A stretch of DNA of 64,000 nt, from positions 124,001 through 188,000 of the forward strand of contig DF236956.1 of assembly GCA_000708835.1 (NCBI GenBank), in the 5' to 3' direction. The stretch is from Klebsormidium nitens. Lineage: Eukaryota; Plantae; Klebsormidiophyceae. The first letter of the stretch is position 1, and each line of letters starts with the position of its first letter. Below the pieces are notes generated by a model. The model ran no database searches. It saw only the letters and a program-made list of their open reading frames with translations, and had not been told where the DNA came from. Below, piece after piece: positions 37,601 to 58,755 of this stretch. Made by a program: the position numbers and the translations under genes.

Positions 37601-40600
37601 TGGTCTTCCTCCGGGCGGAGCGCGAGCGGGACTTCCACACGCTCAGAGACAGCCACCGGGGGCCGGTGGTCGCCTTTTCGTACATGGAAAAGGGGAAAGC
37701 GGCGCCCGGGGGAAGGGACTCCGATTGGCTCTTTAGCGCGGGCGCGGACGGGGCGATCAAGCAGTGGGACCTGGACTCGATGACATGTCGCCTGACGCTG
37801 CGGGTGAGGAAGCAAGACTTGGACTGTGGCATTCATCTTCCGCTTCAAGAGGTGTCGGACTTGGAGATTCCTGTATCTTATCGACGCTAATGATGCTACA
37901 ATTCCAGAGGCTATCCACAGATACTTCGTAAAGCTTTGCATAGAAAGTAGACTTTTGGTGTTTCCTTTACCCCTCGCAAGATCTTTCGTCGTTCTTCCGT
38001 TTCCCTCTGCGACTTCCGTAAAGTTGCCCTTTCCGCCATACTGCTAAGACCAGACTCTTTTCTTTGCCGAATGCATTACGATACCGAAAGACTTCGGCAC
38101 CTCGAGTAAACATCCTAACACAAAAGCGCTCCGCACCCGCAACCACCCCAACTCCCAAACTAACCCCAACCGCCCCCCGGGTGCTTTCACAGTGCAACCG
38201 GCTGTGAATTTAGATAAACCTTACTGGACTCTTTCCGTACCGCAGACAGGAAAGGCGGAGCCGAGCTGCCTGCTTTTCTGCGACGAGGAAGAGAGGCTCG
38301 TTTGCGGCCATGAGGACGGGAGCATCAGCCTATGGAATCTGGACACGCGGCAAGCGCTCATGTTGCGGGAGCAGAGGTGACCATCATTCCAGTCCCATTC
38401 GTAGTTTGGCCTCTTACCAAGGATACGTCTGCGAATTTTGAGAAGAAGGCGAGAGGACTTCGATCCTGTGGACTCACTGGAGTCCACTAGTGTGACGCGA
38501 TCGGACTGGCCATGTGATATAGTAAATCCATGAAATCGTCAAAACGTTTTGGCATTGAGGCAGAGCACCAGAGCTGTAGCATTAAAGTCAAGTGGAAGGT
38601 TTCAGCTTTAGCCGATGATTAGACACGCCTCGAGATCAAAGAAGAAGGTAGACGTCATGTAAGATCGATTGAAACACCGCCAATAGCGTCCAATATTGTT
38701 CTTATGCAGCAACACGATCACTGGCTTGGCCTACTTCTCACGAAAGAATGGGGACCACTGTCTGGCGACCGCAAGCTTCGATGGCACGGTATGAAGTCGC
38801 CCTCGTCTTTCCGAAGCGTCCTTCAGTAATCAATTCAACCCTGCATCTCAAAGACTGTATTCAGCAGAGGCACTCCGGCAGGGTTCTGCTGATAGTAGGA
38901 TACAGATGCGCAGCGGTATCTGATCAGGAGGAAGGTAGGCGAGCTGCTAGAGTGTACGTCGCAGCCTCTTGTCACAACTTTTCTGACAGACTTGCTAGAG
39001 TGACTCCACTCCATCAATCAAAAAGGGAGAGCGTGACTGATTTGCGTTTAGCCACTTGATCAATGTGAAAAGAGATTTAACTGCAATTTTCCAAAACCTC
39101 CTTGGAAAAAGATTCTGGGGCATATCAAATGCAAGCAAACGCGGTCCCTGCGTTTTTCGTTCAGTTGGTCGCGCACAAAATCGAGCCTCAGTTCCACGAA
39201 AAAATGCGATGTGCTCTGCTTCCGTAGGCGTCCGGCCCCCTCCGCTCCGCTTTCCGTCTGCCCGGCACGCCCATTCCACGCGCGTTCCGCTCTTCCGTGC
39301 AGGTAGCGGTTTGGAACATACACAGCACCCCTGATGCGTCCCCGCACCTCATTGAGAAGTTCGTCGCGCATGAGGATGCGGAAATCCTGTGCGTTGCACA
39401 CTCGACAAGACATGTAAGAATTGGTCTACCGCTTTGCCTTTTGACGTAGATCTCCTCGTTTACAAAACGACAAGTATCAACGCGTGACCTTTTTGTGCAA
39501 CATGAGTCGACTTCGCCAAATGTAGTCGAGATATGGTAATTTCCTCTGAGGGAACGCCGACTTTCCAGTTGTCCTTGTCGATTCATAGACCCCTTTTAAT
39601 AAGTCGCGTAATATAGTGCATTGAACCAATCTATGACGCGCTTCTGCTTACCGCAGGGAACAATCTGGCCATCAAAGTCCGCAGAAAGGTGAAGTGTCCC
39701 GACACGCTGTGCTTGCAATGAGTTAGAAAAGGAATATTCACGGGTTGGAGGAGCTGCTCTTCACCGCGGGCAACGGCCTGACCATCAATGGAAGGCTTCA
39801 CTTGACCAAGTGCCAAGGCTGATACTTATACCACGATTCTTACCAAATCCGATACGCGCCTTTCCTTCCTTCAACGCAGGAGCGCATGCTCAAAGAATAC
39901 GACACGGTCATTAGGGTGCTAAAAAATGGAATTGCTCCGTCCAACGCAGGAGCTCCTATCCGAAGAAAATGATCTGGCCAAGCAACTTTAAGGCGTCAGT
40001 AGAAGCCTCTCCTTCCGCACGCAGGAGCTCCCGTTCTCATTGGGAACGCTCTGGCCATCACATTCCTGCCCAAAGCGCTATGCTTGTCATAATTTGGAGA
40101 TCATCTGAATAAAGTCTCTCCGCCTCGCAGGAGCTGCTCTTCACGGCGGGCAACGACCTGACAATCAAGGTCTGGGCCACGGTACGCTACACCGAGCCGC
40201 GGGGCGCGCTCTGCGGCCACGAAGCGCCGGTCACGTGCCTTCTGCTAGAGGGGGACCTGCTCTTCTCGGGCTCAGAAGACGGCACCATTCGGATATGGGA
40301 TGTGAGTGAACATCCCGAGTCGAACATAAAGAGAAGTCGCACTCACCTGAAATGTGACCGAAGTCGCCTGAAGTCCTTCCTCTTGTAAACGTTAGGCTTT
40401 CCTGAAGGATTTCCTCGCGCGTTTCCGCCTGCCCCTTGGCGCGAAGCTACTAATTAGAGTATATTTGGGGTCAAAACCCGCCCGGAACCTAGTAGCCTAG
40501 GCTAGCTAGCTAGTCAGACCCCCCGCAAAAGTTGACCGGTACTGCCACTGAGCTAGGATCCTAGCTGAAATTCACCGTAGACCGTGCGATCGAAATTTGA

Positions 40601-41913
40601 CCGTCGCGATCGCGATAAATCGTCCGTACGGTGAGTCAAATTTTAAATTTAATCGCGCGCGACGGTTGCGGGGGGCTGAACCACTGGTCACTAGCCTAGT
40701 AGCCTAGGCTCACTAGGCTAGTAGGTCAGTGGTCGAATTCCGGCCGGTTTTGACCCCAAATCTCCTCTAACTCTCTAATCTGAGGCTCCAAGGTTCTCTA
40801 TTTCGGCAGACCGCATACCACGCCTCAGTTCGTTCCTTGCTTGCTCCGTACTCCTTCAACTTCGATGCATCTCCCATTAAACCGCCAAGGTTTCTCCCGG
40901 CAATCGAATCGTCAAGCATGTCGTTCTTAGGCTAGTTGCTAACTTTGCTGAGACACTTTATGCCGAGAAGCATAGTAGAGCGTAAACACCCAATGAGTTT
41001 CACTATCTTGCCAATTGCAGATCTCGGTGGATTTGGCGTGCGCCCTCCAAAGGACTCTTGAGGGCCACAAGAGCCCCGTGACGGACTTCGCCGTCCAGAA
41101 AGTGACCGGGCGCCTCTTGTCCAGCTCGCAGGACATGCGGGTTCTTGTGTGGGACTACGAAAAGGTGAGAAGCATGGCGTCGAAATCTTTCTTCGAGGCT
41201 TTCATACGTGCAGTTCCAAGCTGCTTTCGTCACTTGCCGTCCGTCCGTCCTTTACGGCTGTCAGGTACGTAATGAAGAAGAGGTTCTTGGTTGATGAAAG
41301 ATCGGGAACGGACCATCTTGCTTTGTCTATTGAGATGAAACTGCAGAAGTTACGAAAGTTGTACAGAACGGTCGTCAAGAAGTGGTTCCGCATCTCACCA
41401 TGCGATAGGGTTGCCTGATAAGCATGTTTGAGCTCGTTGTCGCGTTTTAAGTTCCCTGTGACAAGCCTTTCAGCATTCTATGCTTCATCGATCTTGACTC
41501 GGCGCTTCTTTCCACTACCATTCGGAGCCATCAAGCGAGACAAGCAACCGTATTTCAAAACAGTTCAAAGGTTAGCAACTCGGCAGGACCGCGGCGGGGG
41601 CCGCCCCTTTCGCTCCTCTAAGCCTGAGGAGCATGCATTCTTGACATATAACAAGACTTTGTTCCTACTCTAGGGTCACCTGCTGAAGACGATACCCTAC
41701 GGCGATGAGCTGCGGTGCTTGGCAGCAAGAGCGGAGAATGAAGAGATCCTCGTCGGCACAACACAGGGCAGCATTCTTGTGTACGGGTGTGGAGCTGAAG
41801 CGGCAACGGATCTAATTGTGCAACGGGACGGATCCGAGGGGGAATCGCTTATGGAGGAATTAGAGTCTCGGCTGCAAAAAGAAGGTCAACCAAGGGAACA
41901 AAGTCCTTTGTAA
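31620..41913 (+). CDS. Large WD40-repeat protein with an internal Ser/Pro/Arg-rich insertion
   Basis: Many GH...SGS.D..I++WD repeats across about 16 GT-AG exons, e.g. LAGHNGRVSSL...FSGSSDLSIK|VWD, LTGHGGTVTCM...SGSTDATVRLW, FSAGADGAIKQWD, CGHEAPVTCL...FSGSEDGTIRIWD (40131-40301), LEGHKSPVTDF...SSSQDMRVLVWD; stop at 41911-41913. The start codon is uncertain. Confidence 0.88.
34787..34980 (+). repeat. Coding 33-nt (11-aa) tandem repeat, six units (A-R/H-S/T-P-x7)
   Basis: ARSPEPPNPPR AHSPGASSRSP ARSPDCSNSSR ARSPDPPSRSQ ARSPEPLNIPS ARTPEPLSLAW. Confidence 0.85.
39645..40170 (+). repeat. Acceptor-junction echoes upstream of WD40 exon 40131
   Basis: Pyrimidine tract plus CGCAG|GAGC occurs at about 39875, 39945 and 40020, before the true site at 40130. 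A near-copy of the exon start (gagctgctcttcaccgcgggcaacggcctgaccatcaa) sits at 39751-39788, and another partial copy at about 39651-39680. Confidence 0.88.
40457..40767. mobile_element. Non-autonomous MITE (about 311 bp) in a WD40 intron
   Basis: Imperfect ~30-bp terminal inverted repeats (left GAGTATATTTGGGGTCAAAACCCGCCCGGAA; right reverse complement GAGGAGATTTGGGGTCAAAACCGGCCGGAA), flanked by TA on both sides; subterminal CTAG-rich repeats; no ORF. Confidence 0.82.
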
Positions 41914-44123
41914 GTGAGGAGAAGCGATAATGCAATGTCAAAAAGTTACAGGCTGGCAAGAAGCTTGGAAGCTGTCTATGAAAAGTGTGCACGCAACGGA
42001 GTCAACTGTTTGCGGTCGATGGCACCATATTGATAAAGGCATTGCGCTGGCACGGCCGGCTCTGCTCGTCCAAGTGCATGATCGTCTAATTAATAAATGA
42101 AAGCTAAATCGACATGACATGGCAGACAGATGGTAAGGGCAATGCTCACAAAAAGTCTACAGAAAGTTCTCAAACTTGCAACGAGATACGGTAGCTTATC
42201 AGCTTATGGTGAATCCATACCAGTCATTATTTCATGCAATACCGGTATTATCCGAGTTTGCAACTGCATAATGCACTCACCGTCAGCCTGGGCCCGTCCG
42301 ATTGGCGGACAAACTGTGCCAAATCGTATCGACGGCCTACGATTAAATGGGAAATCACTTGCCAAAGATAGCGGAATCAGACAGAATCACGGCAACCGTC
42401 CAAAACAGCTGCATGCGGCTCAGATGATCTGCACCGTCCAACGTGGTGATCACCCTGGATCGGTTGTGACGGTTGCCAGCTACGTGGACTACTCGAGAGT
42501 CGAGTCCCGACTGGAGTCCTTAAAAGCGCCTGCCTCGCTTATCTCTACAAACTTGCAATCTGCAGAGCTTTCAAAATTGAGCAGGAAGGTCTGCCTACAG
42601 AACGTAGGATTCGAATTGGTAGGAAACGGCGGCTTCTCCTTGCATTCTTCTTCTGGATCTTGCTCGTTCAGAGTTCTCTCAGGTTCTCCACCAATGTTCC
42701 GCAGGTGCATCACTTTTTGTGCTTCGTTGTGAGGGATTCCTCCCACCATTCGTTGCAACCATGTCGCCACGAGCAGGGCAGACTCCTAGTGGGAGAAGCG
42801 GGGCTGAACTCAGGATCTGGCACCCTCAGACTTGCTGTCACCTACTTGTTGTGCTGCTCGGGTTGAGTTATGGCAGCGGTGTGAACGGGCAGACCTTTCA
42901 AAGTGAGTGATGTTCAGATTTTTTTGTTGCAGCATGAGCTCTCCAAAATTGCGAACAGCTTGGCTAAGTCGTGAGCAGACTCTAGGGGCTACTGCCTTGT
43001 GCCCTTTCTTGTAACGAGAAAATAATTCTGGAGCTAACGACTCAAAAAGGGGCCACTCTTGACTTTTAGAAACTCACCAGGTACACGTCTGGCTTTGAAT
43101 GTGGACTCCCTTAGCTCTGTCAGTGTACAATCTCTTGACGCCGCATACCGGGCCGCAAAAAGTATCTTTTCAAGCCTGACAAGGTGATAGTTGAGCTACA
43201 AACTCTGAGCATGTGAGCATGAAATTGCAATCAAGGACCCAGTTCCTGACAATTGTGCTCAAAGCTGGTAGATTTTGCATGTGTAACCCTACGATCAGCT
43301 CTTTCTGAGTTCGGTTGCAAGCTAGCTTTTTGTACTCTCTTCTCCTGTCTCTACTCGTATCAGCCCCCTTTGCTCGTTCTTCTTGCACAGCCAATCAATG
43401 CTTCCGCTCCAAAGCCCTTCCGTGTTTTCCCCAAGCTCTTGAGTCACCAAGCTGTCTCAATCCACTTGTTCCCGTTCTTGGCGCATTCGAGGGTGAAAAT
43501 CCAACACGTTGTCGAAAAAGAATAGAAAAAAAATACCATTCCCTGTCAAACCCCCTGTCTGACCCCCAAAGCAGGATTTTACCCCAGCTCAAGATGACTC
43601 CCAAGACAAAATCTTCTTTCGTGGCCACCTTTTCCCCTTTCTTTCTGTTGGTTGGAAGTCAGACACATGAAAAGAAAAGGTGGTGAAAGAAGAACTTTCA
43701 CTCTTTCCACAAAACCCTTCAGTATGTCTCACATCTGAAGCCTTATCTGCGAGCGCCTCTCCTCATACCATCTCCGTGCTGTGTGCTGGAATTCGATGCC
43801 AGAGAAGTCAGACCCGAACCCTTCTTCTATCCCGCTCTTACTTTAACCCCCTTGGACGGCACCACGACCACCATCCTTTTTTGCTGCACCTCCATTCCTG
43901 TCACTAGGAGCTGGAAGAGATCGATCAAGTAGATCAGAATAAGTACAACAGAAAAGTATAGATATTGTTAGCCTGCCCCCTGACTTGCACTTTGCCCCTG
44001 CACCCCTATGGACGGGGCTCAAAGAACCAACCCCGCTTTTGTTCTTATTCGTCCCCGTTTAAAACCCTTCTGGAGCCCCAGAAGTGGAAGGATACGGAGA
44101 AAGAATACGTGTTCTCCTGGCAG

Positions 44124-47100
44124 ATTTTGCGTCCTGCCCCTCTGGTTGGACTCAGACTTCAAATGGCGGCTGTCACTTACTCGTCAAAAACTCATCCCGA
44201 GTCTCATGGGACGTCGCGGAGCAGCACTGTGTGAATGAGGGGGGACACCTGGCGTCGGCATCCACGCTCGGAGAGTGGCAGGACATCAATGCCACGTGTG
44301 CGGGCAGTGCGCAAACGGACTGCTGGTTTGGGGTGCGCCAGCTGGCGGACCAGGCCCTGCCGAGTGCCGGGTGGTATTGGCAGGTGAGAAGCGACTTTGT
44401 TAAGAAACCAGGTGTTGGAAAGTCTTGGTGGGCTTGTGGAGTACGGACTTTATGTCCGGATGTAGACGGTGGTTTTTATTGGAGTTTCCTGGCTTCTTGA
44501 ATCTCATGCAATGTACTCCCAAGCATTTCGAGGTTTAAGTCAGCCTCACATCGGTCGTCCTAAGGGCGCCTATGAGGGCTTGAGTTGCATGATAGTGTCA
44601 GTATTTTTTGTAGGTGACCAAAGCTTCTGTGTAAAGATGGGTTTTCCGGGCTTGCCGTCGTCTAGTTCGCTCCCTCGAAGAATATTGTGGGGTGACACTC
44701 TATCAAACCTCTTCTGATTCAAAGCCCTAGGATCAACTTTTTGCCACAGCTCTCACAATCGCTGTGCACATCAACCACCAGGTGGCACTTGGGCTTGCAA
44801 GGAAGGTGCACTTTTGGGAAAATTCTCACGAAGTCTCCTCCGGCGGTCGTCTAGACATGCGCAGGGGCTCCCGCAAGAAGAAAGAGACTCTAACAAGAAA
44901 TAGAAGAAAAATACGCGTTTATGTAAACTTCCATTGCTACGCAGGACTGCATGGAAAGAGAGACCAACTCATCCAAGTCCTTCATTGCATTCGCAGGATT
45001 GCATGGCCCAGAATTCGGTCTCCTGGGACCTCATGAACCGGAAGTCGGTCGTCCGGTGGCGCGGCGTTGAGACCGGGGTTGCCAGCACAGCCGAGCCAAA
45101 CGATTACAACAGCGCCGACGGAAGCTACGGTGTCGAGCGCAACAACGAGAACTGCGCCAAGTGGCAGAACGGCCAGATACTGGACTATGCATGCAGCTCA
45201 GTGCTCCCAATCTCCCCTACCGCTTACGTCTGTAGCAAGTCCCGATGTGAGTGAGCTTTTCCTTTTGTATCCAGAAAGCCTCTAGAGTTAAAGTGACTGA
45301 CTTGTAAGCAATCTTGGAACCAGATTGAGAAGAGCGCACTTACTCGCTGGTGGTGAGAACCAAATTGTTTTGCCTAATGTTGGAGTATCAGGGTATACAT
45401 ACTTCGGGGTGTCCAACTGTACAAGCATGTAATGAGGAGGCTACATACCCTACTTGTTCTTCGTCACCCTCTTCTCTGAGATGGTGCACTGCCACTGGTC
45501 TTAGTCTCCGATCAAAATAGAGACGCGAGAGATTGGAGGCAAAATGGACAGGGCTCGCACTCCAAAATTTCAACGCCTTTTGGAGTAAAGTTGCACAGAC
45601 ATTGAGCTCTTCGTCTCTTCTTTATGTTTCACTCGAACGTTAGTCTTTAACCCGAGACTTTCCGTGCCTCGACATTTGGAGCTCTCCCTTTCAAAGCTTT
45701 CCTTGACGCCCCTTTGCGCGATGCGGCCGAGCCCTTCTAAGCAGACTGCAACCTCTTCCAGGCACCTAGAAGCATCTCATATCTTCGTAACTCATCCCCA
45801 GGCTGCCATCCTTTTATGCACCTCAAGCCATCTCAGCCCTGAAACCTTGAAACCCTCGAAACCAATCCGTAACCTTCCTTCAGACTGCACCCCTTCTATG
45901 CACCTCGAGCCATCTCAGCCTAAATCAATTCCTTGCAACTTTTTCGACCTTAAACCCTGCGTAACCTCTCGTAACCGTTTGTATTCCTTCGTAACGCATC
46001 CCTCAGACTGCGGCATCAACGCCACCTCCGTCAGCAGCGGCAGCGGCTCCTCTGCCACGTGTTCCTGCGCGTGCCTCCCCGGATTTGCGGGGGACGGCCA
46101 AAACTGCCGGCCGTGCGACCCGAACGCGACACCTGTCACGTCCAAGAGCGCGAGCGCCGCAGAGACGAGTGCCAGCTGTCTCTGCCGGAGCCCTTACGTG
46201 GGCAACGGCTTCACGTGCCAGCTGTCCGGCTCGGCGAACCTTTGTGAGTGCGGAGCCCTTGTGAGATTGTGAACCCGTGAATTTGGGTTCCACATCTAGG
46301 TGCTTTTTTCTGTAGTAGAGTTTGGCACTGACCTGGGAAGCACGCCGATGTGTGTGGAATCTGTGTCTGTCGTAGCCTGGGTGCTCGACCCTGTATTTGA
46401 GCACTGTCGTCGACAATTTCATCGTAAGGACTACCGTTTGATATTTCGCAACCCAGAGATTGACGATCCGAAACTTACGGAACAAGCAATAATGAGCTGT
46501 GGAGGCAAGAGTGGAATTCTTAGGTCGCTCGGAGGTTGCCACGGAGGACCTTGCAAATCCTGTCTCGGTACTGGTACTGACAAAGTCTTCTCCGCTGGCT
46601 CCTTTGTGCAGCTCTTGCTTTTCCCTCACCCCCCCGGAACGTGGTGAGTGCCCAGAGCGACCCCCCCGATCATGTCTGAATTTTCTCCGTCGTGTTTGTG
46701 CTTCAACGCATCCAACGGTCCAGCTTCGGTATCTGCTTAGTCAACGGGCGTCGACATGCTTCTCGAAGGAACAGGGGTTTTGCTGAAACTCGATGGTGAG
46801 ATCAGCGGACATTTTTATCAACAACAAAACTAGAAAAACTTATAACACCGCTTCAGGCAGCTACAATTAGTCGATTAAGCTTCCCCCGGTTGCTCTCTGC
46901 AGTGCTCGACGTCCCTCGTCTCAAGCGCCCCCGCGGGCAACATCGTCTACAACGACTTCTCCAGCGGGATTCCGTTCAACTGGTTCTGTCCGTTCTGTTC
47001 CGGCGGCCTGACCAACCAGACGGACTCCACTGGAACCTACGTGGTGGCAAGTGCTGCCGCCAGGGGAGGTCGGGTCGATGCGGCTGTGGGGGTGCAAGTC

Positions 47101-50100
47101 AATAACCTGCAGGCGAATCAGAGCCACTATTTTAGCGCATGGGTGAGTTTCAAAACGTTGTTGGATCACCTGTTGGTGATGTCACGAGCGTCAGCATCTG
47201 ACGAAAAGGTTCCGCTGTGTTGCTCCCTTGCGGCTCTCTCTCTTCCCTAACCGAACGAGTAGGGCTTCAGCTTGGCTCATGTCACGAGTCCCTCGAGTTG
47301 AAGTGTTAGGTTTTCCGCTTCGCTGATGTAATCTTTTGGATCTGTATTTACCCCCGGACACGGCCCTTGAGCGCCTTCAATGCAATCTACTAAGGCGTCA
47401 CAAGGTCTTCATCAGAAGCACCCTTTGCAGCAGGACTCTTCGCATCTCATACATCCCGGTCTAGTGCCGCCTTCTCTGTCTCGAGCGTCACTTTCCGGCT
47501 CGCTGACGTCATCCGCCTTCCTTCACAGGTGCGCACGAGGAACGCGGTGAACCAGACCAACCGCGGCGTGATCATCTTCGGGAGCAACACTCTGGCGGCG
47601 GGCAGCTTCCAGGGGGGTCCCTTTTGCATGGCGCCCGTGGCGCTGATCCAAAACGACTGCTGGTCTCTCATTATGGGCGCATTCACACCGCCCACCAGCT
47701 CGCAGATGATCCGTATTGGCGTGTGAGTGCTTTTTCACACCGTCCCTTTCCCTCCGAACCTTCTGGGACGTTTCGTCGCGCTCTTTTAAGAGTTTGCTGT
47801 GGACGCATTCACACCGCCCCCAGCTCGCGGATGATCCGGATCGGCGTGTAAGTGCCTTTTTACACTGTCCTCCTTTTCCCTTTGATTTCCCAAACTCCCT
47901 ATCGTGCTGATCCAAAACAATCGCTAATCGCCGCTGATGGACGCATTTACACCTCCCACCAGCTCACAGACGATCCGGATCGGCGGGTGAGTGTCTATTT
48001 ACACCCGCGCGCCTGTGTTCATTTTGTTCTCACCCCATCAAAAACTCTTTTGTGATTTTCAGACTCGGAGCAACCGCTTTTACATTCTCTTTCATATCCT
48101 GGACCGCAGCGGCGCTCAGGCAGAACTCGAGGATGTTTTCGAGGACTTAATTCACCACGGTGCCCATTTCTGCGAGCTGTAGGAAACGTGACAATTTTCT
48201 GAATCTACTTTGAATCTGGATACTGGAAGTCCAGAAAGTTCGTTGTTCGAAACCTGGGAACCAGTTGAGCACAAGGCGAGAGATCTATCATTGAACTGTA
48301 GGCTTATAGCACTCACTGATTGTTTGTCTCCTTGGCAGTGCGGACACTTCTGCGGACATCCACGTGCACGGCGTGTCCGTCGTTCCACGCAGCACGTCCG
48401 ATATCATCAAAGCGCAGAACGCAAGCATAGATCAGGTGGGCTTATTAATATTTTGAAACGTGTTTCTCCGCGCTCCTTGTAGAACAGATGCGTTATCAGT
48501 GTCCTTTCAGTATCCTGGTCTCTGGTCTTTGATTCTCTGAGTCCGACACTGCGGGAAGTCGGACTCGCTTTGGGAACGTCCGGGATGAAGATGCTGACAG
48601 GAAAGCTCACCTTGACGTCAGCTGCCTCCGCATAGTTGCCAAGTACCAACCCCAGAAAACAGACGCATCCGTTCAGATTCCTTGCAAAACTCTCGCTTCA
48701 GCAGACTTGCCATCTGCCTGCATATGTAACGCTGGCAGCGACGGCCGCATGCGTGACCGTAGTACGGCCCGTTTTCTGGACCGCTAGCTGCCGTCTGGTT
48801 TGGCGGACAACGACAGCTTCTTTCTCAAAACGTCCACGTCCAGAACCCTCTCCCAGTATCCCTACGTGTTTCGGCTGACGTATCTCAGTTGATAGGCTGA
48901 CGTATCTTCATCCGATCGGCTGACGTGTTTTGTCCGACCGTTCGCAGTGGCGCAAGGCACCCCTCCAGCTGTCCTTCCGCCGGAACGGAGCCCCCGTGGC
49001 CGGAACGTTCGACTTGGAGCTTGTCCGTGCGGGCTTTCCATGGTGAGAATCAGGGCCTGTTATGACCAGCGCCTGCTTCCTTTAGACCCTTTGACTCACT
49101 GATCAGGAAAATGTCCGCGGACGCTTCAGGTTTATAGGGCCTTTCAAAGGCAGCTCGACTCTTTCGTGCGTCTGACACAGGTGATCTTGTGGCAAAGAAA
49201 AGAACAGGGAAGGGTTTGAAAATTTTGACTGCGAAGGCCGATGCCTTTTCGACAGGAGGGAGATACCTAGGTGCTTGTCCCACCGTCGGAAGAAATCAAG
49301 TTCCAGAGCTTAGTTGCGGACTGATTGAGCGAAATCAGTCCCGGTACCTTGTGAAGTACCACTGAATCAGGACCAATCGAAACCCCAGAACGAGAACAGT
49401 GCTTCTAGAAGGACGCGTGTCTACCGTCTCTACCTTTCGAAAGATCGCGTGTGCGGCTGACAGGTGTCGATAAATGAGGCTACCAATGAAACTTCGAGCA
49501 GACAGAGTCGTTCTTCTCGGCAGTGCCTGCAAACTCGGTACGCTGACGTCACCTGACCTCACCTAGCGTCGCTTACTCTGCAGGGGCATCCAGGACCTCG
49601 ACACGAAAGTGGTGACGGACTCGGCGCTGCAAAACTTTGTGTTCAACACGTTCAAGGCCAGTGCTGTGGCGCAGGGATTGTCGTGAGTCGCCCCTTTTTC
49701 TGAGATACTATGATTTACCCCCTGGTTCTCGTAGCTAAAATGGGGAACTTTCTGCTTTTAGATTGGTCTATTTCGCATGTTCTGTTGTCCTTGTATGTGG
49801 CATCTGGCTCGAGCGTACCCATACGTCCGCTTTCTGTGTAGCTTACTGCTAGAACCAACCCCTCTTAGAACAGAGGGGTTGTGATTAGTGGACATCTCCT
49901 CAGTTTGACACTGCTATGGGTAATCCATAAAAAGCGAGACAAATCAAGATAAATTTCGCTTTCATCCACCGGTTTAGTGCTGCGCAAAAGTGCCTAAAAG
50001 CCGCGCTGATAAGGTTTGCCATGGGACCCTCTATGCTCATCGACCAGCAAAAGCGGTGCAAACCTTGGATCTGCCTCGTTCCTAAAGGCTCCTTCCCGCT

Positions 50101-53100
50101 TAGTCGCTTTTCCACCCTCTTCCCACGATCAGCAAAAGCATAAGCCCAATGCATAAGCTGAACCCTAACTCCCGTCTTAGTGGCTAGATCATCAGGTTGA
50201 CCCGCATTTTCACCACTTTGGAGCGATGAAGCTGTTCACCTTTCTTCAGACCCTTTCCCAACCCGCCCTTAACCCTTCTCCTCAGGGGCTGGATCACTGA
50301 CGAGCCGGCGCCGAACACGCTTAACTACGCCGGCAACGAGCCGTTCATTGCCTGGGTGCAAAGCTCGAACCTGTCCCTATGGGGACCCCAGATTGTGTGG
50401 GATGACCTCAACAACGGGATCCCCCAATGGGTGCAGCAGCAAGTGGCGGCCGGGGTGCGTAAGCAGGCCCTTTCAGATTTGCAAGGTTTGTGTTAAGTCA
50501 AGGTTTGAGGCGATTCGAAATGTTAGGGTTTCTAGAGTCCTTGACTGGGTGCAGCAGCAAGTGGGGGCCAGGGTTCGTAAGGAAGCTTTTCAGGGTTTCA
50601 GGGTTACCTTTAAGACCGACAAGAACCAACTTCACCTCACAGTTTAAGGTTTTTGAGTTCAGGCGAATGAGGTCAATCAGGTTTCCAGGATATCCTAGTG
50701 AGTGGAACCTGGTCGTCGCTTTTGTGCACAATTGCAAACGCCCGCAGTAGCACCGCCGTCACACGGTTCTTTTGGAGCAAATCGGACCGTCCGTTGACAG
50801 CCACGTGTCGCCTCCGCAGGGCAACCTCGACGCGCTGATCGCGCAGCGCGCAATCAGGGCCATGAACGCGGCGGACGGTCGTTACGTCACTGTGACGGTG
50901 GACAATGAGGGCATCCACAATACGTACATCCCCAGAAACGCCAACGGGATAGACAGCATCGGTGCGTTGGTTTCCTCCATGAGTCCCTTCAGCTGGTTCA
51001 GCTTGGCAAGAGTAAAAAGAATAGCTTTCAGCGTTTGCTCTGGGCTCTTTACCTTGTGCGTTCTGAGAGGGGCGTTTCCTCTGAATTGCGCTTTCACGAC
51101 CCTGTCTCCAACTAATATTCAATGATTCCAAACCATTTTCCGAGGAACTTCGTTCTTGTTAACCACCCGAGTCGCTCCGTTTTGCCGGGGCCATTGACAG
51201 ACGTTCCAGCTCTTTGGACGTGAAGTCAAATTCTTTTCTGGTATTTCAAAAGCTTGAAGTCCTCGAGAACCAGTTCGCTCTGGCCACTCACGAACGTTTT
51301 GTTCCTGGACCTGCAGTCGAGATGTTCACTACGGTCCGTTCCGCCGACCTCGCAATCGGCCACAACACGCCCATCACCTTCAACGAGTACAGTGAGCGCG
51401 CCGCGCCTATTTCCTTGACTTCATCAGTTGTCTTTTTGCTCGCTTTCGTGTTCCGTCCTCTTGTTTGAGAGTTGGGTATTTTGCGACCTTTTTCACCGAC
51501 CTGCTTTTGCCGTGCATGGGCTCTCGTAAAAGTAAGACGCCTCTGGGGAATCTGCCAAACGCCGAGCCGCTTGCTCAACGTGACGTTCACATCAGTGTGG
51601 CACTTGACCTGAGTCATAACTCGAGTACGCTCGCCTAAATGCGCCCTCGTCGTAGCCTTTGCAAAACGGAGCGCATGTCCTCGGAAACTCGGGGTTAGGA
51701 GATGTGGAAGGCAGAGGGACTCTTCAGTCCTCCTACTTTGCTTGCCTAATAAGATCTGACTTCCTTCAAAATGTTGCAATGCAGATGTCGGCGAGAGCTG
51801 CTACTACAACTTCCCACTTCAAGTAAGTCACCCGCCTTGTCTACTTGCCCCACTGCGCTCAAAGTCAAGTTCATTTCTCATATGATGGCACTCGAAAAGG
51901 CTCTTCGGTCACAGAGTCCGGTTACGAACCTCGACCCTGGTTTGACTGCGCAACGTCAGATTTGTGCCTCTTTGTTGAGCGGTAGCACACTCGGAAATGC
52001 GTTTTTGCTCTGCATTCTCTGCTAAACCCCAAACCCCGGAGCGACTCACAGCTGTACCGACTCTCTGCAGAACGGCGGAGACCCCGTATCTCCTGACAAC
52101 TACATCGACCGGATCAACTTCCTGAACGCTCAGGGGGCGGGCCAGCTGGTGAATGTAGCGGGGCTGCAGTTCCAAATCACGCCCAACGAGAACGAGGCGC
52201 AGCGCATGAGCATCGGTAAGGGAACCACCTTGCGCTGTGCTTTTGAGTGCTTTATTTGCGGAGGACGGAAGAACGTGGCTTTTGTCGCGGGGTCCTGTCC
52301 GCGCCTTGGCTATCATCCCATCTATCGACGGTTATTTGCGGCTTTCCACCAAGCTGTGAGTGAGAACCCGGAAGGCGGGACTCCAAACCGGCGACAATTC
52401 TCTGTCGCCCGGTTCTGTTATACTCCTGTGTTCTGAATGTGGAAGATTTGGAAAGGTTCTCTTCTTTCGCACTGCGTATACATGAAGGGGGCTCCCTTGA
52501 AACGGTTCTCTATCCTTCTTAAAGTCCCTCGACCGAGACTGGCCGGACCGAAAGAAAGCTTGTTGAGCAAGAGCATTCGTAGGAGGACACCCTTACATTT
52601 GAGCATTTTCTCCTTCTAAAACATTCGAGTTGTGTTGACAGAATCAAAAACAGATTCTGCCAGATTCTAGAAGCCTTATCGCGCTCACCTTACGTTTTCA
52701 GGCATCGACTACATCCACAACCGCACGGGCCTTCCCATCCAAGTCACTGAGTTCAACGTCAACGTCGGGTTCGGCAACGGTTACCCCTTCGACCGCACCT
52801 ACCAGGCAAACATCGTCGAGACATCGCTCCGGCAGCTCTTCGCCAACCGCCACGTGTCAGCCATCATGTTCCAGCACATGGTGCCGTACCCGTGGGGCGG
52901 CGATTCGGACGCCACGTGCGGACCGTGCATGTTCGCTTCGGACACGTACGCGCCAAATGCGGCGGGGCAGCGGTACCTCAAGCTGCGGGACGAGTGGACG
53001 ACGCGGGTTACGGACGGGGCGGTTAGCAGCCAAGGCAGCGCTGCGCCGGTGGGTTTTCTATACCTCGTCTTTTACTTTGGGTTTCCGTGACGAGAGACGT

Positions 53101-54493
53101 TAACGGGGCGGTTAACGGTGTTGGGTGCTTGTCTCTTTTCTAAGTTGCCGTGACGAAAGTGGTCGACGGGACGGTTAGCGACCAAGGCAGCGCTGCGCCG
53201 GCGGGTTTTAAGAATCGTTTCTTTCTGAGTTCCCCGGTGACGAGACTGGTTACTGGGCGGTTAAGCTTTCGTCGGCTTTTTGAGCTGCCGTAACAAAGGG
53301 GTTGACGGGGCGATTAGCAGCCAAGGCAGCATTGCGCCGGTATGTTTTGAGTGTTTTATTTGTTTTGGGATCCCGTAAGGAGAGGGATTTCAAAAGTGGT
53401 TAAAAGTTAAGGTAGCACTGCGCATGGTGGTTTTAATCCTTCATTCTTAGCCTCCGTAACGAGAGTGGTTGACGGGGCGGTTAGCAGCCGAGGCTGCATT
53501 GCGCCGGTAGGCTTTCCTCATCTCCTTCTTGAAATTCCGTTAGGAGAGCGATTATCAGGCGGTTCAACAGCCACGGCAGCGCTGCACTGGTGCCAGAAAG
53601 AGCCAGTCCTTCTTTTGGGCTCCCGTAACGGAGTGGTTAACAGGGCGGTTAGCAGGCAAGGCAGCGCTTCGCCGGTGGGTTTAACTCCGGTTCCACTTCC
53701 GCTTTTGGTCCCGTTCTTTTCTTGAACTCTCGTCACATTTCTCTTCTTCTGCGCTTCCGTGGCTTCCATCTACTCTGCTACTACGAAGGTTTGCAAACGT
53801 GTTCCCGGCCACTTTCCTCCCCCTTGCGAGGCCTCGTTTTGTTTTCGGTGATTTTTTCTTCATTCTTCCACGTTCGGCCTTTACGCCGTTATACGCTGCT
53901 CCCTCGCTCGTTGAGTGTTTCGCTTTGACGCCTTTCTTTCAGGCGTCATTACATCACTTTCTTTGCGCCGTTTTCCATTCAGTCGGTGACAAACCCTCGG
54001 GATACCCCAGACACATTCAGGCTCATTGCTACGTCGTGTGGCTCTGTTTCGGCTTGCGTCCCGACCGTTCTTCCTTCTCCTCCGTCAACAGCAAGCAGTC
54101 AGCAAGCCCGCAGGCTTGTTTGACAAGTGGAATGTTCCAGATTAGCTGCAGATGACCTCAACGAAAGATTCCACGCTCAGCGGCGCCTGGATCGTCCCTC
54201 TTTTCTAATGTATAGTGATCTTTTTAACCTGGTTTTTCTCCTCTTTGCCAGTTTTTTTGGCGGCGCTCGCGGTGGCGGTTGTTTGCGTTGGCGCTTATCA
54301 TCCATGCATCAAAATGGTTGTTTGCTGAGAGACTCAAAAACCTTGCTTGCTGCCTTTACAGATGCGCGTGTTCCACGGAACCTACAAGGTTACTTTGAAG
54401 GACTCCAACGGGAATGCTTCCCCGAGTCAGACAATCACGGTCTACAACGATAATGGCGCCAACACAACGCAGGCCTTCGTTGTCAACGTTTAA
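44124..54493 (+). CDS. Multidomain protein: C-type lectin - 2x EGF-like - CBM4/9/22-like - GH10 (xylanase-like) - C-terminal beta domain; N-terminal/signal exon unresolved
   Basis: Phase-compatible exons 44124-44383, 44997-45246 (CTLD: CPSGW...W..AEQHC...GHLAS...CWFG...EPND...ENC), 46007-46243 (EGF: CSCACLPGFAGDGQNC, CLCRSPYVGNGFTC), 46612-46643, 46903-47142 (...HYFSAW|V), 47529-47722 (CWSLIMGAF), 48339-48435, 48948-49042 (GFPW|G), 49584-49682, 50286-50454, 50820-50961 (VDNE), 51317-51391 (FNEYN), 51785-51822, 52071-52215, 52702-53048 (GLPIQVTEFNV), 54362-54493 (RVFHGTYKV). Confidence 0.9.
45740..46010 (+). repeat. Acceptor/branch-region echoes upstream of the EGF exon
   Basis: cag|actgc recurs at 45744 and 45883 before the true site at 46006; cgtaac and (a/g)gccatctcag motifs recur with the same unit. 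Confidence 0.7.
47642..48005 (+). repeat. Donor-junction echoes of the CBM exon end (three copies in total)
   Basis: gcattcacaccgcccaccagctcgcagatgatccgtattggcgt|gtgagt is echoed at about 47801-47855 (donor GTAAGT) and about 47906-48000 (donor GTGAGT). Confidence 0.9.
53013..53682 (+). repeat. Donor-junction echoes of the GH10 penultimate exon end (about 7 degenerate copies)
   Basis: gacggggcggttagcagccaaggcagcgctgcgccg|gtgggttt is echoed at about 53100, 53165, 53304, 53400, 53470, 53555 and 53637. Confidence 0.92.
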
Positions 54494-56525: not shown

Positions 56526-57902
56526 CTACTGACCACCCTCAGTGACTTCGCTTGCCTTCAAGTCCAAGCCCGCAAAGTACTCTGCAACATCTCCAGCGCG
56601 CGTCAGCCAAATCTTCTCTGCACTCTGTCTCATTTTTAATACATCCAACGCCCGCCGCAGCTCGTGCAACCGGAACGGCTGCCCCATTATGTATGGATGC
56701 AAAGCAATTCCCATGACGAGAGCCTGGCCCGTCCGCTCAACTTGGCGTTCCATTTCGCGAAGATTGCAAATGATCATGTCGACAAATTCGACGTGAGACC
56801 GGCGGTTGGGGACTATCGTCGGGATGTCGTTTAGTTCTTGGGGATAGGGTACGGACACAATGTGCGATCCGCTCCGCGTGCGCATCCAGAAGGGCTGGTC
56901 GTCGGAAGCCCAGTTGAGAGTGTATTTATACCCGGCCTCCTGCATTTGTGAGCGAAGGTTCAGCAGAAGAATGCAGTGCGCCAACCTGTTACACGATTTG
57001 ACAGGCATGGACCATAGTTTGAAGAGACCTAGGTAGCGACCAAAAGTTGAGAACCAAGCAAACGGCTGTTGCAGGCTCGGTGCTGAATTGGTCCCTTGGA
57101 AGGAAAAGCGGCAGAGCCGATGTGTGCGTACAACAGAGAACCCAAGAGTGAGTGCATCTCAACACTGTTGCAATCGTTGGGTCTTGCCATTGAGGGGGCT
57201 GCACACTGAGATTGATAAATCCTGGACGTTTCCAAGCTATCTCCTGGGATTCTCAAAAATTTCAGCGAGTCAAGGTGGAAAATTTATACGACTCAGCTTC
57301 CAGGCCAACCGGGCAAGCAACAAAAATCAGGAAAGCTCTCTTCCAGACGAGTCTTCTTGACACTGAAGCTCATCTCCTAGATACCCACCCACCTGCAGTA
57401 GATCTGGTGTCACATTACTCTCCGAGATCCAGGGGCTGAGCCACCCCTTTGGCCGCACCCCCCCTTTCGTTTCCAACACCTCCGTCGCCTCCGCAATCAG
57501 CCTCCGTTCCTCGTCCTCTGCCAGCCCCCCCTGCCGCTCGTGGTTCCCCCTCCCGTGCGCAACAATCTCATGCCCCTCCCCCTGAAACGTTTTGAGGAGC
57601 TCAGGACAGTAGCTGTAGATCTCAGAATTTACGAGACAAGAGCACGGGAACTCATACTCTTTCAATAGGTCTAGCAACCGCCACGCCCCAACCCGATTCC
57701 CGTAGTCGCGCCAGGAGAAGTTGAGCACGTCGGGCTGCGTCGGGGGGGGCAGCGCGAGCTGCGCTCCGAGCCCCCCCCCAAAGGAGAAGTGCTCGAGGTT
57801 TATGGCGATGTAGACGGCGAGGCCGGTGTCGTTGGGCCAGCGCCAAGGGGGGCGGTGGAGTATGGGGCTGTAGTCATAGCGGGAGTGCGTGGGGAGGGGC
57901 AT
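56526..57902 (-). CDS. CE4 / NodB-superfamily polysaccharide deacetylase-like hydrolase (PuuE-like subgroup), 307 aa, one intron
   Basis: Exons 57902-57393 and 56939-56526. Motifs WP...LAVYIAINLEHF, NFSWRDYGNRVGAWR, HEIVAHG, PKGWLSPW, TPDLLQ|EAGYKY..W..DDQPFW, VPYPQELND and MGIALHPYIMGQPFR. Confidence 0.93.
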
Positions 57903-58755
57903 TGGGCCAGGAGAAATTGGCACAACTTTTCTAGTGAACCTCCTGGTTTAGAGAAAGGTTTTAGGTTGGGTTAATTCAGTCTTTTGCTGGGGAAACTTAG
58001 TTCAAGATTAGATGAGACTGAAACTAGGAGATTGCTCCGAACCGCTGGCTGTATCAAACCTTTGCAATGTTGCTGATGATGGGGGGCCAGTGACAAGGCA
58101 GTTTCGGCTGGTGGGTCGAGCTTACTGATATGTGAGAACTTGCTGATAGAGCGAGCTTATCAAGAACCCGATTTGCACTGATCAGATGATTGTGATGGAG
58201 TCTGCGCTGCCAGTCGATCAGCGGAGTGAAATGTGGGCCGTAACAAACAGCTTGATGAGCAAAAGGTTGCTGATAAGACTTGTATTGGTGACTACTTATT
58301 CTGAAAGCAGGGGCACAGTGGAACTCGGTATCCAGCTGACCAATTCAAGGTCTGATCACATTTCAGCTCCTTCTGGAAAGATGTTACATAGACTATTGGA
58401 AGGAATCTGACTCGACTCAGCTGCTTCACTGTGCGCCGGGCTTCTTGACGTTTTGCGTGATGCTCTGCAAACGGCCACGGCAATGCTAGTAATACTGCCT
58501 TACAAGGAGTAAGTCGTTTGATGTCTAAAGTAGGTTTGAGGCTGCCACCAACTCTGATGCCCAGGGCCGAGAAAAAGAATGCTGTGCAAATTGCATGCTC
58601 CCCGTTCAGCAGCGAAGATCTGGCCAGACAGCGTTGAATTTGAGCTCCCTGGCTCTGGCCCTGGGCTTGCCCTGCAATATTATTTAATTGTAAATATTCA
58701 AATTTGTATGGCAGCTAGACTCTAGAGCAGTTCGAAGTTCGAACAACGGGTTACC

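What the first reader, a model, noticed from the sequence alone, without database searches (positions are those of the whole stretch)
44124..54493. Animal-style C-type lectin + EGF module fused to a CBM-GH10 glycoside hydrolase
Seen in sequence: one continuous phase-compatible gene model gives CTLD - EGF - EGF - short linker - CBM4/9/22-like - GH10 - C-terminal beta domain. The CTLD has the EPN motif (EPND, about 45095-45106) and ENC, with LDY in place of WND. Established: EPN specifies Ca2+-dependent Man/Glc/GlcNAc binding in animal CTLDs; CTLD-EGF tandems are typical of selectins and related animal proteins; land plants have essentially one CTLD protein type (C-type LecRK); plant GH10s have CBM22-GH10 without lectin or EGF. 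Inference: a secreted 'recognise-and-cut' enzyme that targets microbial or own-wall glycans. I do not know this architecture from any green plant.
Basis: partly seen in the sequence, partly recalled or inferred. Interest (0 to 1): 0.8.

Follow-up and report, generated by a model that had tools for sequence, protein, structure and literature searches.

The report
Lectin-headed xylanase gene of Klebsormidium
A green alga close to land plants makes one secreted protein that joins the sugar-binding head of a plant receptor kinase (C-type lectin plus EGF repeats) to a plant-type wall xylanase. I found no description of this combination, and it offers a way to learn what that poorly understood receptor head binds.

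Summary
Spliced RNA contigs from four studies join the lectin (CTLD), EGF and CBM exons with GT..AG introns. One 3317-nt contig carries them all and is long enough for the whole coding sequence.

My model has 17 exons and 897 aa with no internal stop. It runs signal peptide, CTLD, two EGF-like repeats, linker micro-exon, CBM_4_9/22-like domain, GH10-like barrel and C-terminal strand.

The same gene is colinear in two related lineages. One has about 90% aa identity and dN/dS 0.12; the other has about 57-84% identity across all 17 exons.

The lectin head is not an animal import. Its nearest relatives are streptophyte C-type lectin receptor kinases. These include a Klebsormidium-type CTLD-EGF-TM-kinase gene with 58-67% identity and the same intron position. 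The likely origin is exon shuffling of a receptor ectodomain onto a xylanase.

The two catalytic Glu motifs are invariant, but several canonical GH10 substrate-site residues are replaced, so activity is uncertain. The architecture was absent from the 150 best CTLD hits among 1.84 billion proteins, and two paper searches found nothing. It is a new variant of a known kind, of moderate interest. Earlier scan notes had flagged this same stretch.

The parts
42761..42902 (+). Exon 1: start codon and signal-peptide-like N-terminus (47 aa plus 1 base). The 5'UTR extends upstream to about 42537.
   Evidence: The loose end of the RNA contigs before 44124 equals 42873-42902. The donor is GTGAGT. It is the first in-frame ATG after a stop. 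The orthologous exon in L009 encodes a classic signal peptide and L001 a similar one.
44124..44383 (+). Exon 2: N-terminal half of the C-type lectin domain, with CPSGW, the WIGL-like CWFG and an extra C-x7-C pair.
   Evidence: RNA joints. Pfam Lectin_C 3.6e-4. 332 relatives at E<=1e-3. My own CTLD profile scores 78 bits.
44997..45246 (+). Exon 3: C-terminal half of the CTLD, with EPND at 45093-45104, ENC at 45147-45155, ILD-YAC and YVC.
   Evidence: RNA joints. Weak match to the second half of my CTLD profile, with EPN, D-x-x-C and the final Cys in register. These motifs are invariant in three orthologues and the kinase paralogue. No PDB or Pfam hit on its own.
46007..46243 (+). Exon 4: two EGF-like repeats (C-x-C-x-C-LPGF-x-GDG-x2-C and C-x-C-x3-Y-x-GNG-x2-C).
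   Evidence: RNA joints. Pfam EGF_3 3.7e-6, two stretches. All nine Cys are invariant in the relatives.
46612..46643 (+). Exon 5: 32-nt linker micro-exon that joins the lectin/EGF half to the CBM/GH10 half in frame.
   Evidence: Joints 46243>46612 and 46642>46902 in all four runs. Conserved in L001 and L009.
46903..48435 (+). Exons 6-8 (46903-47142, 47529-47722, 48339-48435): CBM_4_9/CBM22-like carbohydrate-binding module.
   Evidence: RNA joints. Pfam CBM_4_9 0.019 in the window and 0.0047 in L009, profile positions 4-74 of 136. 72-97% aa identity in the orthologues.
48948..53048 (+). Exons 9-16 (48948-49042, 49584-49682, 50286-50454, 50820-50961, 51317-51391, 51785-51822, 52071-52215, 52702-53048): GH10-like catalytic domain. 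VDNEG (acid/base motif) is in exon 12 and VTEFN (nucleophile motif) in exon 16.
   Evidence: The start of exon 9 is RNA-supported. The rest comes from phase, GT-AG signals and conservation. Pfam GH10 0.018-0.023 on exon 11. Exon 11 matches 38 PDB chains, GH10 xylanases and Kemp eliminases engineered from one. The exon 16 profile hits Bacillus GH10 XynA 7D88 at E 0.0012 with the nucleophile Glu aligned.
54362..54493 (+). Exon 17: C-terminal beta-strand segment (MRVFHGTYKVTL...) and the TAA stop codon.
   Evidence: Acceptor and phase are conserved in L006, L007 and L009. Weak Ig-like Pfam hits only. The contigs leave 225-492 nt beyond the stop.
47692..48009 (+). Copies of the 3' edge of exon 7 plus its donor, inside intron 7. 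The same kind of copies occur at 50546-50586 (exon 11 edge) and 53139-53682 (exon 16 edge, four copies about 140-168 nt apart).
   Evidence: the repeat finder. No RNA joint uses the intron 7 copies.

Best explanation
This is one expressed 17-exon gene for a secreted protein of about 897 aa. The layout is signal peptide, C-type lectin domain, two EGF-like repeats, short linker, CBM22-like module, GH10-type (beta/alpha)8 domain and a C-terminal strand.

The enzyme half appears to be the streptophyte wall-xylanase type. The head is a copy of the ectodomain exons (CTLD plus the first two EGF repeats) of the lineage's own C-type lectin receptor kinase. It was grafted on by exon shuffling through a 32-nt linker exon, before the three sampled Klebsormidium-type lineages split.

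Inferred working: the protein enters the secretory pathway and reaches the wall. The CBM holds it on xylan. The CTLD adds a second, probably Ca2+-dependent, recognition of a glycan with mannose/glucose-type hydroxyls, through its invariant EPN...ENC...D site. This would restrict where the GH10 domain cuts or re-joins the alga's own xylan.

Shown: one mRNA, conservation under purifying selection, and the kinship of each part. Inferred: secretion, Ca2+/sugar binding, xylan as substrate, and catalysis.
For: One mRNA:
- GT..AG joints link exons 2-9 in four runs from four studies. A 3317-nt contig holds exons 2-7 with 366 nt before them and 1738 nt after. My model needs 142 nt of coding sequence upstream and 1339 nt downstream.
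- The joined frame is open for 2694 nt.

Conservation:
- L001+L006 have all tested exons with intact splice sites, no gaps in exons 2-11, 84-100% aa identity and dN/dS 0.12.
- L009 has all 17 exons colinear at 57-91% identity.

Secretion:
- Signal-peptide-like exon 1 in all three lineages.
- No other hydrophobic span, 13 N-glycosylation sequons and 28 Cys.

Kinship of the head:
- L002 is CTLD-EGFx4-TM-kinase with 58/67/59% identity over exons 2/3/4 and the same intron after AGWYWQ.
- P0138 is named a C-type LecRK. P0119 and P0147 cluster members lie upstream of kinase exons.
- The extra Cys pair before CW[FVI]G is shared with them and found in only 10 of 170 stored proteins (150 hits plus cluster members).
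- C-Lec kinases are reported for Klebsormidium (PMC10868138).

Lectin site: EPND, ENC and D-Y-A-C are invariant in all four Klebsormidium-type sequences.

Enzyme half:
- Exon 11 and exon 16 hits are to GH10.
- VTVDNEG and TEFNVN are invariant.
- The nucleophile Glu aligns with that of Bacillus XynA 7D88, listed as E301 in PMC11600177.
- Klebsormidium walls contain substituted 1,4-beta-xylan (PMC5902652), and 9 GH10 genes are counted, apparently for K. nitens (PMC7027972).
Against: - No exon passes a curated Pfam cutoff on its own: Lectin_C 21.7 against 22.6, EGF_3 27.5 against 28.5, CBM_4_9 at most 17.7 against 25.9, GH10 14.7 against 22.1.
- The second CTLD half and exons 12 and 15 have no significant match outside the lineage.
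- Junctions of exons 10-17 lack read support.
- Canonical GH10 substrate-site residues are replaced, and the replacements are conserved across the orthologues available for each exon. The His of the RGH motif is Pro (WGPQIVW). The Asp after the nucleophile (TELD) is Asn, shown in the alignment. By my own reading of the motifs, the His of Q-x-H is Gln (GLQFQ) and NELKW is QGLSGW.
- The Asn of WND in the lectin Ca2+ site is Leu or Val.
- No binding or activity has been measured.
- The organism name comes only from earlier scan notes.
Confidence: 0.7

Rival explanations
1. The GH10 domain is a pseudo-enzyme or has a changed chemistry. The protein would then be a three-headed wall glycan binder (CTLD, CBM and a barrel cleft that binds without cutting), a transglycosylase, or an enzyme for a glycan other than xylan.
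For: Replaced residues at conserved GH10 positions are fixed across the orthologues available for each exon: His>Pro in exon 11, Asp>Asn after the nucleophile, and, by motif reading, His>Gln and loss of the NELKW motif. The word-indexed search found only three close relatives and no ordinary GH10 fragment. Exons 12 and 15 match no solved GH10.
Against: Both catalytic Glu motifs and their neighbours are invariant across about 30% sequence divergence. The domain evolves under strong constraint. The motif-based residue calls for exons 10 and 15 rest on my memory of GH10 motifs, not on an alignment made here.
Confidence: 0.25
2. One reading: a defence enzyme whose lectin head recognises microbial surface glycans and whose hydrolase cuts them.
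For: EPN-type CTLDs of animals bind mannose/GlcNAc-rich microbial surfaces (established knowledge). The head derives from a receptor-kinase ectodomain, a class often used in immunity.
Against: GH10 and CBM22-type modules act on xylan, which fungi and bacteria do not have in their walls. The alga's own wall contains xylan (PMC5902652). Nothing in the locus points to defence.
Confidence: 0.08
3. There are two neighbouring genes (lectin/EGF and CBM/GH10) joined by read-through or misassembly, or the gene is a decaying pseudogene.
For: Low-depth contigs with retained introns exist. The tool warns that a contig across two genes does not prove a single transcript.
Against: The two halves are joined by precise GT..AG splicing through a 32-nt exon, in frame, in four studies. 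There is no stop in 2694 nt. The same junction exons are conserved in two other lineages with dN/dS 0.12.
Confidence: 0.02
4. The CTLD-EGF head was acquired by horizontal transfer from an animal.
For: Many top hits by score are multi-CTLD animal proteins, for example from a nematode and a brittle star. CTLD-EGF tandems are typical of animals.
Against: Those high scores come from up to 13 repeats at about 30% identity. The best single-domain relatives are streptophyte C-type LecRKs at 39-41%, and a Klebsormidium-type kinase paralogue at 58-67% with the same intron position.
Confidence: 0.02

Closest known systems
Land-plant CBM22-GH10 endo-1,4-beta-xylanases (AtXyn1 type)
   Same: The order CBM_4_9/22-like module then GH10 barrel. 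An N-terminal strand before the barrel (WRKAPLQLSF...FPWG) and a C-terminal ...EW...FHGTYKV strand, which I recall as typical of plant GH10. The NE and TE catalytic motifs. A secreted wall enzyme.
   Different: It carries a CTLD and two EGF repeats in front. Only one CBM was detected. Several substrate-site residues are replaced. The comparison with the plant sequences is from my memory, not from an alignment made here.
C-type lectin receptor kinases of streptophytes (At1g52310 type; here L002, L010, L011 and P0138)
   Same: The first CTLD half is 39-41% identical to plant C-type LecRKs. The extra Cys pair before CWxG is shared. Relative to the Klebsormidium-type kinase L002, the CTLD-EGF exon structure and the EPN/ENC/D motifs are the same.
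   Different: There is no transmembrane segment or kinase; a CBM-GH10 enzyme follows instead. The land-plant-type loci L010 and L011 lack both the EPN motif and the EGF repeats.
Selectins and other animal CTLD-EGF proteins
   Same: A CTLD followed directly by EGF-like repeats, and an EPN motif in the long loop.
   Different: No closer sequence kinship than about 30%. The EGF repeats are short EGF_3-like units. WND is replaced by ILD or AVD. There are no complement-control repeats and no membrane anchor.
Bacillus GH10 xylanase XynA (PDB 7D88)
   Same: It is the best solved match of exon 16 (E 0.0012). The nucleophile Glu aligns, and so does the C-terminal ...RY.KL..EWTT... extension.
   Different: It is a bacterial single-domain enzyme. 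It has VTEYD where the alga has VTEFN. Identity is only about 25-30% over about 100 residues.

Membership tests
Glycoside hydrolase family 10 (Pfam PF00331, clan GH-A) | Sequence match to the family model above the curated cutoff | tested here: inconclusive
Exon-wise only. Exon 11 scores 14.4-14.7 bits, E 0.018-0.023, at profile positions 51-95, against a cutoff of 22.1. The other exons have no Pfam GH10 hit.
Glycoside hydrolase family 10 (Pfam PF00331, clan GH-A) | Nucleophile Glu at the end of strand 7 (I/V-T-E-L/Y-D) | tested here: met
   The exon 16 profile aligns VTEFN with VTEYD of GH10 XynA 7D88 at E 0.0012. That nucleophile is listed as E301 in PMC11600177. The residue is invariant in four sequences.
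Glycoside hydrolase family 10 (Pfam PF00331, clan GH-A) | Acid/base Glu in the N-E motif at the end of strand 4 | tested here: inconclusive
   VTVDNEG is invariant in the window and L009 and lies at the expected distance after the exon 11 match. However, exon 12 aligned to no solved GH10, so the assignment rests on motif and spacing.
Glycoside hydrolase family 10 (Pfam PF00331, clan GH-A) | Conserved substrate-site residues (Lys of N-x-x-K-W, His of G-H-x-L-x-W, His of Q-x-H, Asp of T-E-L-D) | tested here: not met
   WGPQIVW has Pro where the family has His. Asn replaces Asp after the nucleophile. GLQFQ and QGLSGW are my motif readings. All are conserved in the orthologues available for each exon.
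Glycoside hydrolase family 10 (Pfam PF00331, clan GH-A) | (beta/alpha)8 barrel fold | not testable with these tools
   The domain is split over eight exons.
C-type lectin-like domain (Pfam PF00059) | Sequence match to the family model | tested here: inconclusive
   Exon 2 scores 21.7 bits against a cutoff of 22.6, E 3.6e-4, at profile positions 2-65 of 107. The same exon finds 332 proteins at E<=1e-3, and all ten scanned have Lectin_C. It scores 78 bits against my own CTLD profile. Exon 3 is only weakly matched.
C-type lectin-like domain (Pfam PF00059) | Canonical cysteines (C0-C0', C1-C4, C2-C3) and the WIGL motif | tested here: met
   CPSGW...C, AEQHC, CWFG, ENC, DYAC and YVC are all present and invariant in the orthologues and the paralogue.
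C-type lectin-like domain (Pfam PF00059) | Ca2+/sugar site 2: E-P-N, Glu, and W-N-D | tested here: inconclusive
   EPN, the Glu of ENC and the Asp are invariant. The Asn of WND is Leu or Val and the Trp is Ile or Ala. Binding has not been measured.
C-type lectin receptor kinase (plant C-Lec RLK) | Transmembrane segment and intracellular protein kinase after the CTLD | tested here: not met
   There is no hydrophobic span after the signal peptide, and CBM and GH10 exons follow instead. The paralogue L002 and the loci L010 and L011 do have kinase exons. The gene shares the ectodomain only.
EGF-like domain (Pfam PF12947 EGF_3) | Match to the model and a conserved Cys pattern | tested here: inconclusive
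   27.5 bits against a cutoff of 28.5, E 3.7e-6, two stretches covering the C-terminal half of the model. Nine invariant Cys.
CBM_4_9 / CBM22 (Pfam PF02018) | Match to the model | tested here: inconclusive
   15.8 bits in the window and 17.7 bits in L009 against a cutoff of 25.9, at profile positions 4-74 of 136, from the first of three exons only.

The most novel reading that the evidence does not exclude
The lectin-EGF head keeps the ligand specificity of the C-type lectin receptor kinase it was copied from. Enzyme and receptor would then read the same wall glycan: the enzyme works at, or produces, the structure that the kinase senses. That would identify a cell-wall carbohydrate as the ligand of a receptor kinase whose ligand, to my knowledge, is not known. 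It would also date wall-integrity sensing of this kind to before land plants.
Probability: 0.15. Interest if true: 0.8.

Novelty: new variant of a known kind. Interest (0 to 1): 0.55.

Why it matters
Plant GH10 xylanases and C-type lectin receptor kinases are each known. A natural fusion of the receptor's ectodomain to the enzyme appears not to be.

The fusion is expressed and conserved under purifying selection, so the head must do something useful next to a wall enzyme. That gives a concrete, testable lead to what the streptophyte C-type lectin domain binds.

It is also a clean, datable case of exon shuffling in an alga close to land plants. According to earlier scan notes, the GH10 genes of this genome have picked up several other unusual modules.

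The remodelled GH10 site, with the catalytic pair kept and the substrate residues changed, is a second open question that ordinary assays can answer.

Tried and rejected
- My first downstream model had 16 exons, with a GTACAG donor after FN and an acceptor at 52052. I rejected it because L009 has no compatible acceptor. A conserved 36-nt block then revealed the 38-nt micro-exon 51785-51822, which restores phase with strong donors in both species.
- A candidate exon 10 at 50048-50077 and an acceptor at 50250 were rejected. The conserved block at 49473-49698 and the acceptor at 50286 fit better.
- Ends of exon 16 at 53006 or 53021 were rejected in favour of 53048. The reading frame stays conserved up to there in L006, L007 and L009, and the intron copies carry that donor.
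- The exhaustive protein search with exon 2 returned no full-length protein of this gene, only exon-sized fragments P0002 and P0003.
- The word-indexed search with exon 16 gave only three close fragments, so I could fetch no ordinary GH10 sequences for an alignment or a tree.
- PDB searches with exons 3, 12 and 15 found nothing useful.
- The protein-atlas lookup of exon 16 gave only sub-0.9 leads to GH10 and clan GH-A fragments.
- The lectin-evolution paper and its supplements do not list a Klebsormidium C-type lectin.
- The joined sequence was used only inside my own scripts, to check the open frame and count residues.

Full report
**What is there**

The window is eukaryotic, intron-rich DNA of about 52% G+C. 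Stop-free stretches on the + strand between 44.0 and 54.5 kb give weak, exon-sized Pfam hits in one order:
- Lectin_C, E 3.6e-4
- EGF_3, E 3.7e-6
- CBM_4_9, E 0.019
- Glyco_hydro_10, E 0.018

Earlier notes of this scan name the genome as Klebsormidium nitens. I did not verify the name. Everything below is consistent with a Klebsormidium-type streptophyte alga.

**One transcript**

Twenty public runs hold 15-48% of the sampled words of this stretch, as expected for RNA of an intron-rich gene. I laid the contigs of four runs, from four studies, on 43000-48999. They show seven joints, all GT..AG:
- 44379>44993
- 45246>46007
- 46243>46612
- 46642>46902
- 47141>47528
- 47722>48339
- 48432>48945

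One contig (X8 record 16, 3317 nt) carries exons 2 to 7 in a single piece, with 366 nt before them and 1738 nt after. The lectin/EGF half and the CBM/GH10 half are therefore spliced together, through a 32-nt micro-exon and in frame.

Nothing covers 43000-43999. The loose end in front of 44124 is identical to 42873-42902, which is followed by GTGAGT.

**Gene model**

I used reading phase, splice signals and conservation in related loci. A first model needed a poor GTACAG donor and failed in the relative L009. A conserved 36-nt block inside that intron turned out to be a 38-nt micro-exon with good signals in both species.

The final model has 17 exons, a 2694-nt coding sequence and 897 aa, with no internal stop. 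Donors are GTGAGT-like throughout. The contig lengths fit it: exons 2-7 sum to 1213 nt, exactly as in the contig, and the 1738 nt after exon 7 cover the remaining 1339 coding nt plus about 400 nt of 3'UTR.

The layout of the 897-aa protein is:
- signal-peptide-like N-terminus, about residues 1-40
- CTLD, 49-216
- two EGF-like repeats, 219-288
- linker
- CBM_4_9/22-like module, about 318-470
- GH10-like domain, 485-854
- C-terminal strand, 855-897

Counted on the earlier 880-aa model, there is no other hydrophobic span, and there are 13 N-glycosylation sequons and 28 Cys.

**Conservation**

Exon-sized fragments in the protein collections led to related loci.

- L001 and L006 come from one sample. 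They carry exons 1-11 and 16-17 with intact splice sites, no gaps in exons 2-11 and 84-100% aa identity (exon 1: 53%). dS is 0.48, dN 0.058 and dN/dS 0.12.
- L009 is a 44.8-kb metagenome contig. It carries all 17 exons colinear on one strand at 57-91% aa identity, including both micro-exons, and its exon 1 encodes a classic signal peptide.
- L007 holds exons 15-17.

The fusion is therefore old enough to be shared by three lineages, and it is under purifying selection in every part.

**Where the lectin head comes from**

With exon 2 as query, the exhaustive search found 332 proteins at E<=1e-3. The high scorers are animal proteins with up to 13 CTLD repeats at about 30% identity.

The best single-domain matches outside the lineage tell a different story:
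- P0138 is named a C-type lectin receptor-like kinase of Forsythia, at 39% identity.
- P0119 (41%) and P0147 (39%) have cluster members that lie 0.4-1.5 kb upstream of kinase exons.

All of these share an extra C-x7-C pair in front of CW[FVI]G. Only 10 of 170 stored proteins (150 hits plus cluster members) have it.

The closest relative, L002, comes from the same sample as L007. It reads CTLD, four EGF-like repeats, a transmembrane segment and a kinase. The CTLD intron is at the same position, after AGWYWQ. Its identity to the window over exons 2, 3 and 4 is 58, 67 and 59%. That is nearly as close as the distant orthologue L009, at 67, 67 and 62%.

C-Lec receptor kinases are reported for Klebsormidium and traced to early streptophytes (PMC10868138). 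The simplest history is that the ectodomain exons of the C-type lectin receptor kinase were duplicated, up to the end of the second EGF repeat, and placed in front of a CBM-GH10 gene. This happened not long before the sampled lineages diverged.

**The lectin site**

In all four Klebsormidium-type sequences, EPND, ENC and D-Y-A-C are invariant. Anchored on the Cys, the position of animal WND reads ILD or AVD. Four of the five classical Ca2+-site ligands are therefore kept and the Asn is lost. Fifteen residues separate EPN and ENC.

The land-plant-type kinase loci L010 and L011 have no EPN and no EGF repeats. Ca2+-dependent binding of mannose/glucose-type sugars is plausible but untested.

**The enzyme half**

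Four lines of evidence point to GH10:
- Exon 11 matches Pfam GH10 at profile positions 51-95. It also matches 38 PDB chains, GH10 xylanases and Kemp eliminases engineered from one, over W..EP...NF.....W...N......W......P.WV.
- A profile of exon 16 from four sequences hits GH10 XynA of Bacillus (7D88) at E 0.0012. GLPIxVTE aligns on the nucleophile, and the C-terminal ...RY.KL..EWTT... extension also aligns (the nucleophile is listed as E301 in PMC11600177).
- VTVDNEG and TEFNVN are invariant.
- The strand before the barrel and the FHGTYKV strand after it resemble what I recall of plant GH10 enzymes. That is memory, not a test.

Against an ordinary xylanase, several residues differ. The His of the RGH motif is Pro in all three lineages. 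The Asp after the nucleophile is Asn. By motif reading, the His of Q-x-H is Gln and NELKW is QGLSGW. These changes are fixed, not decay.

The word-indexed search found no ordinary GH10 fragment sharing 5-mers with exon 16. I therefore file the domain as GH10-like with a remodelled substrate site, and I leave its activity open.

Klebsormidium walls contain substituted 1,4-beta-xylan (PMC5902652), and 9 GH10 genes are counted, apparently for K. nitens (PMC7027972). An endogenous xylan-modifying role is the natural reading.

**Is it known?**

- None of the 150 best CTLD relatives has any similarity to the CBM or GH10 exons, or a GH10 acid/base motif.
- No protein containing exon 2 in a long chain exists among 1.84 billion representatives. 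The fusion therefore seems not to be annotated anywhere in that collection.
- No paper holds both 'C-type lectin domain' and 'GH10'.
- The survey of plant lectin architectures does not list a Klebsormidium C-type lectin.

Limits: only the 150 best of 332 hits were inspected, and the literature library is partial.

**Verdict**

The head, however, is home-grown from a receptor kinase, and the target is more likely the alga's own wall than microbes. This is a new variant of a known kind.

**Left out**

That scan and fold are the first thing to do next.

Noticed in passing
window 47692-48009, 50428-50586, 52987-53682; also L009 15257-15543, 13561-13805 and 11901-12095: The introns hold decaying tandem copies of the neighbouring exon edge plus its splice site, spaced about 118-168 nt. 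There are four extra copies after exon 16 and two after exon 7. In L009 the copies are of exon 5' edges, lying upstream of exons 3, 4 and 6. No RNA joint uses the copies after exon 7. This matches the earlier scan notes on 'echo arrays' in this genome.
   Followed up: partly
L002 1-5488 (Logan SRR14092358): A Klebsormidium-type C-type lectin receptor kinase with four EGF-like repeats between the CTLD and the membrane span. Its CTLD keeps EPN...ENC...D.
   Followed up: partly
L010 7992-10320 and L011 1515-4571: Compact C-type lectin receptor-kinase genes of unknown streptophytes. Their second CTLD half lacks EPN (it reads ...CPNPASPRLC...KWDLC...), and they have no EGF repeats.
   Followed up: no
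window 42694-42732: A short upstream open reading frame (12 codons, MFRRCITFCASL) lies in the presumed 5'UTR of the gene, out of frame with the main start at 42761.
   Followed up: no
window 56529-57947, minus strand: The downstream neighbour is a polysaccharide-deacetylase-family gene (Pfam PF01522 on the orthologous ORF in L006), conserved in position in L006. By eye it looks more like a PuuE/allantoinase-type member than a xylan esterase.
   Followed up: no
window 45217-46036 and 46214-46641: Low-depth RNA contigs (3-12 against 60-230 for the spliced ones) cover introns 3 and 4. They are probably unspliced precursor RNA rather than an alternative isoform.
   Followed up: no
window 34642-42459 and L001 1-8119: The upstream neighbour gene(s) are syntenic between the window and L001, with conserved exon blocks at 77-97% nt identity. 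One L001 ORF has a weak WD-repeat hit.
   Followed up: no
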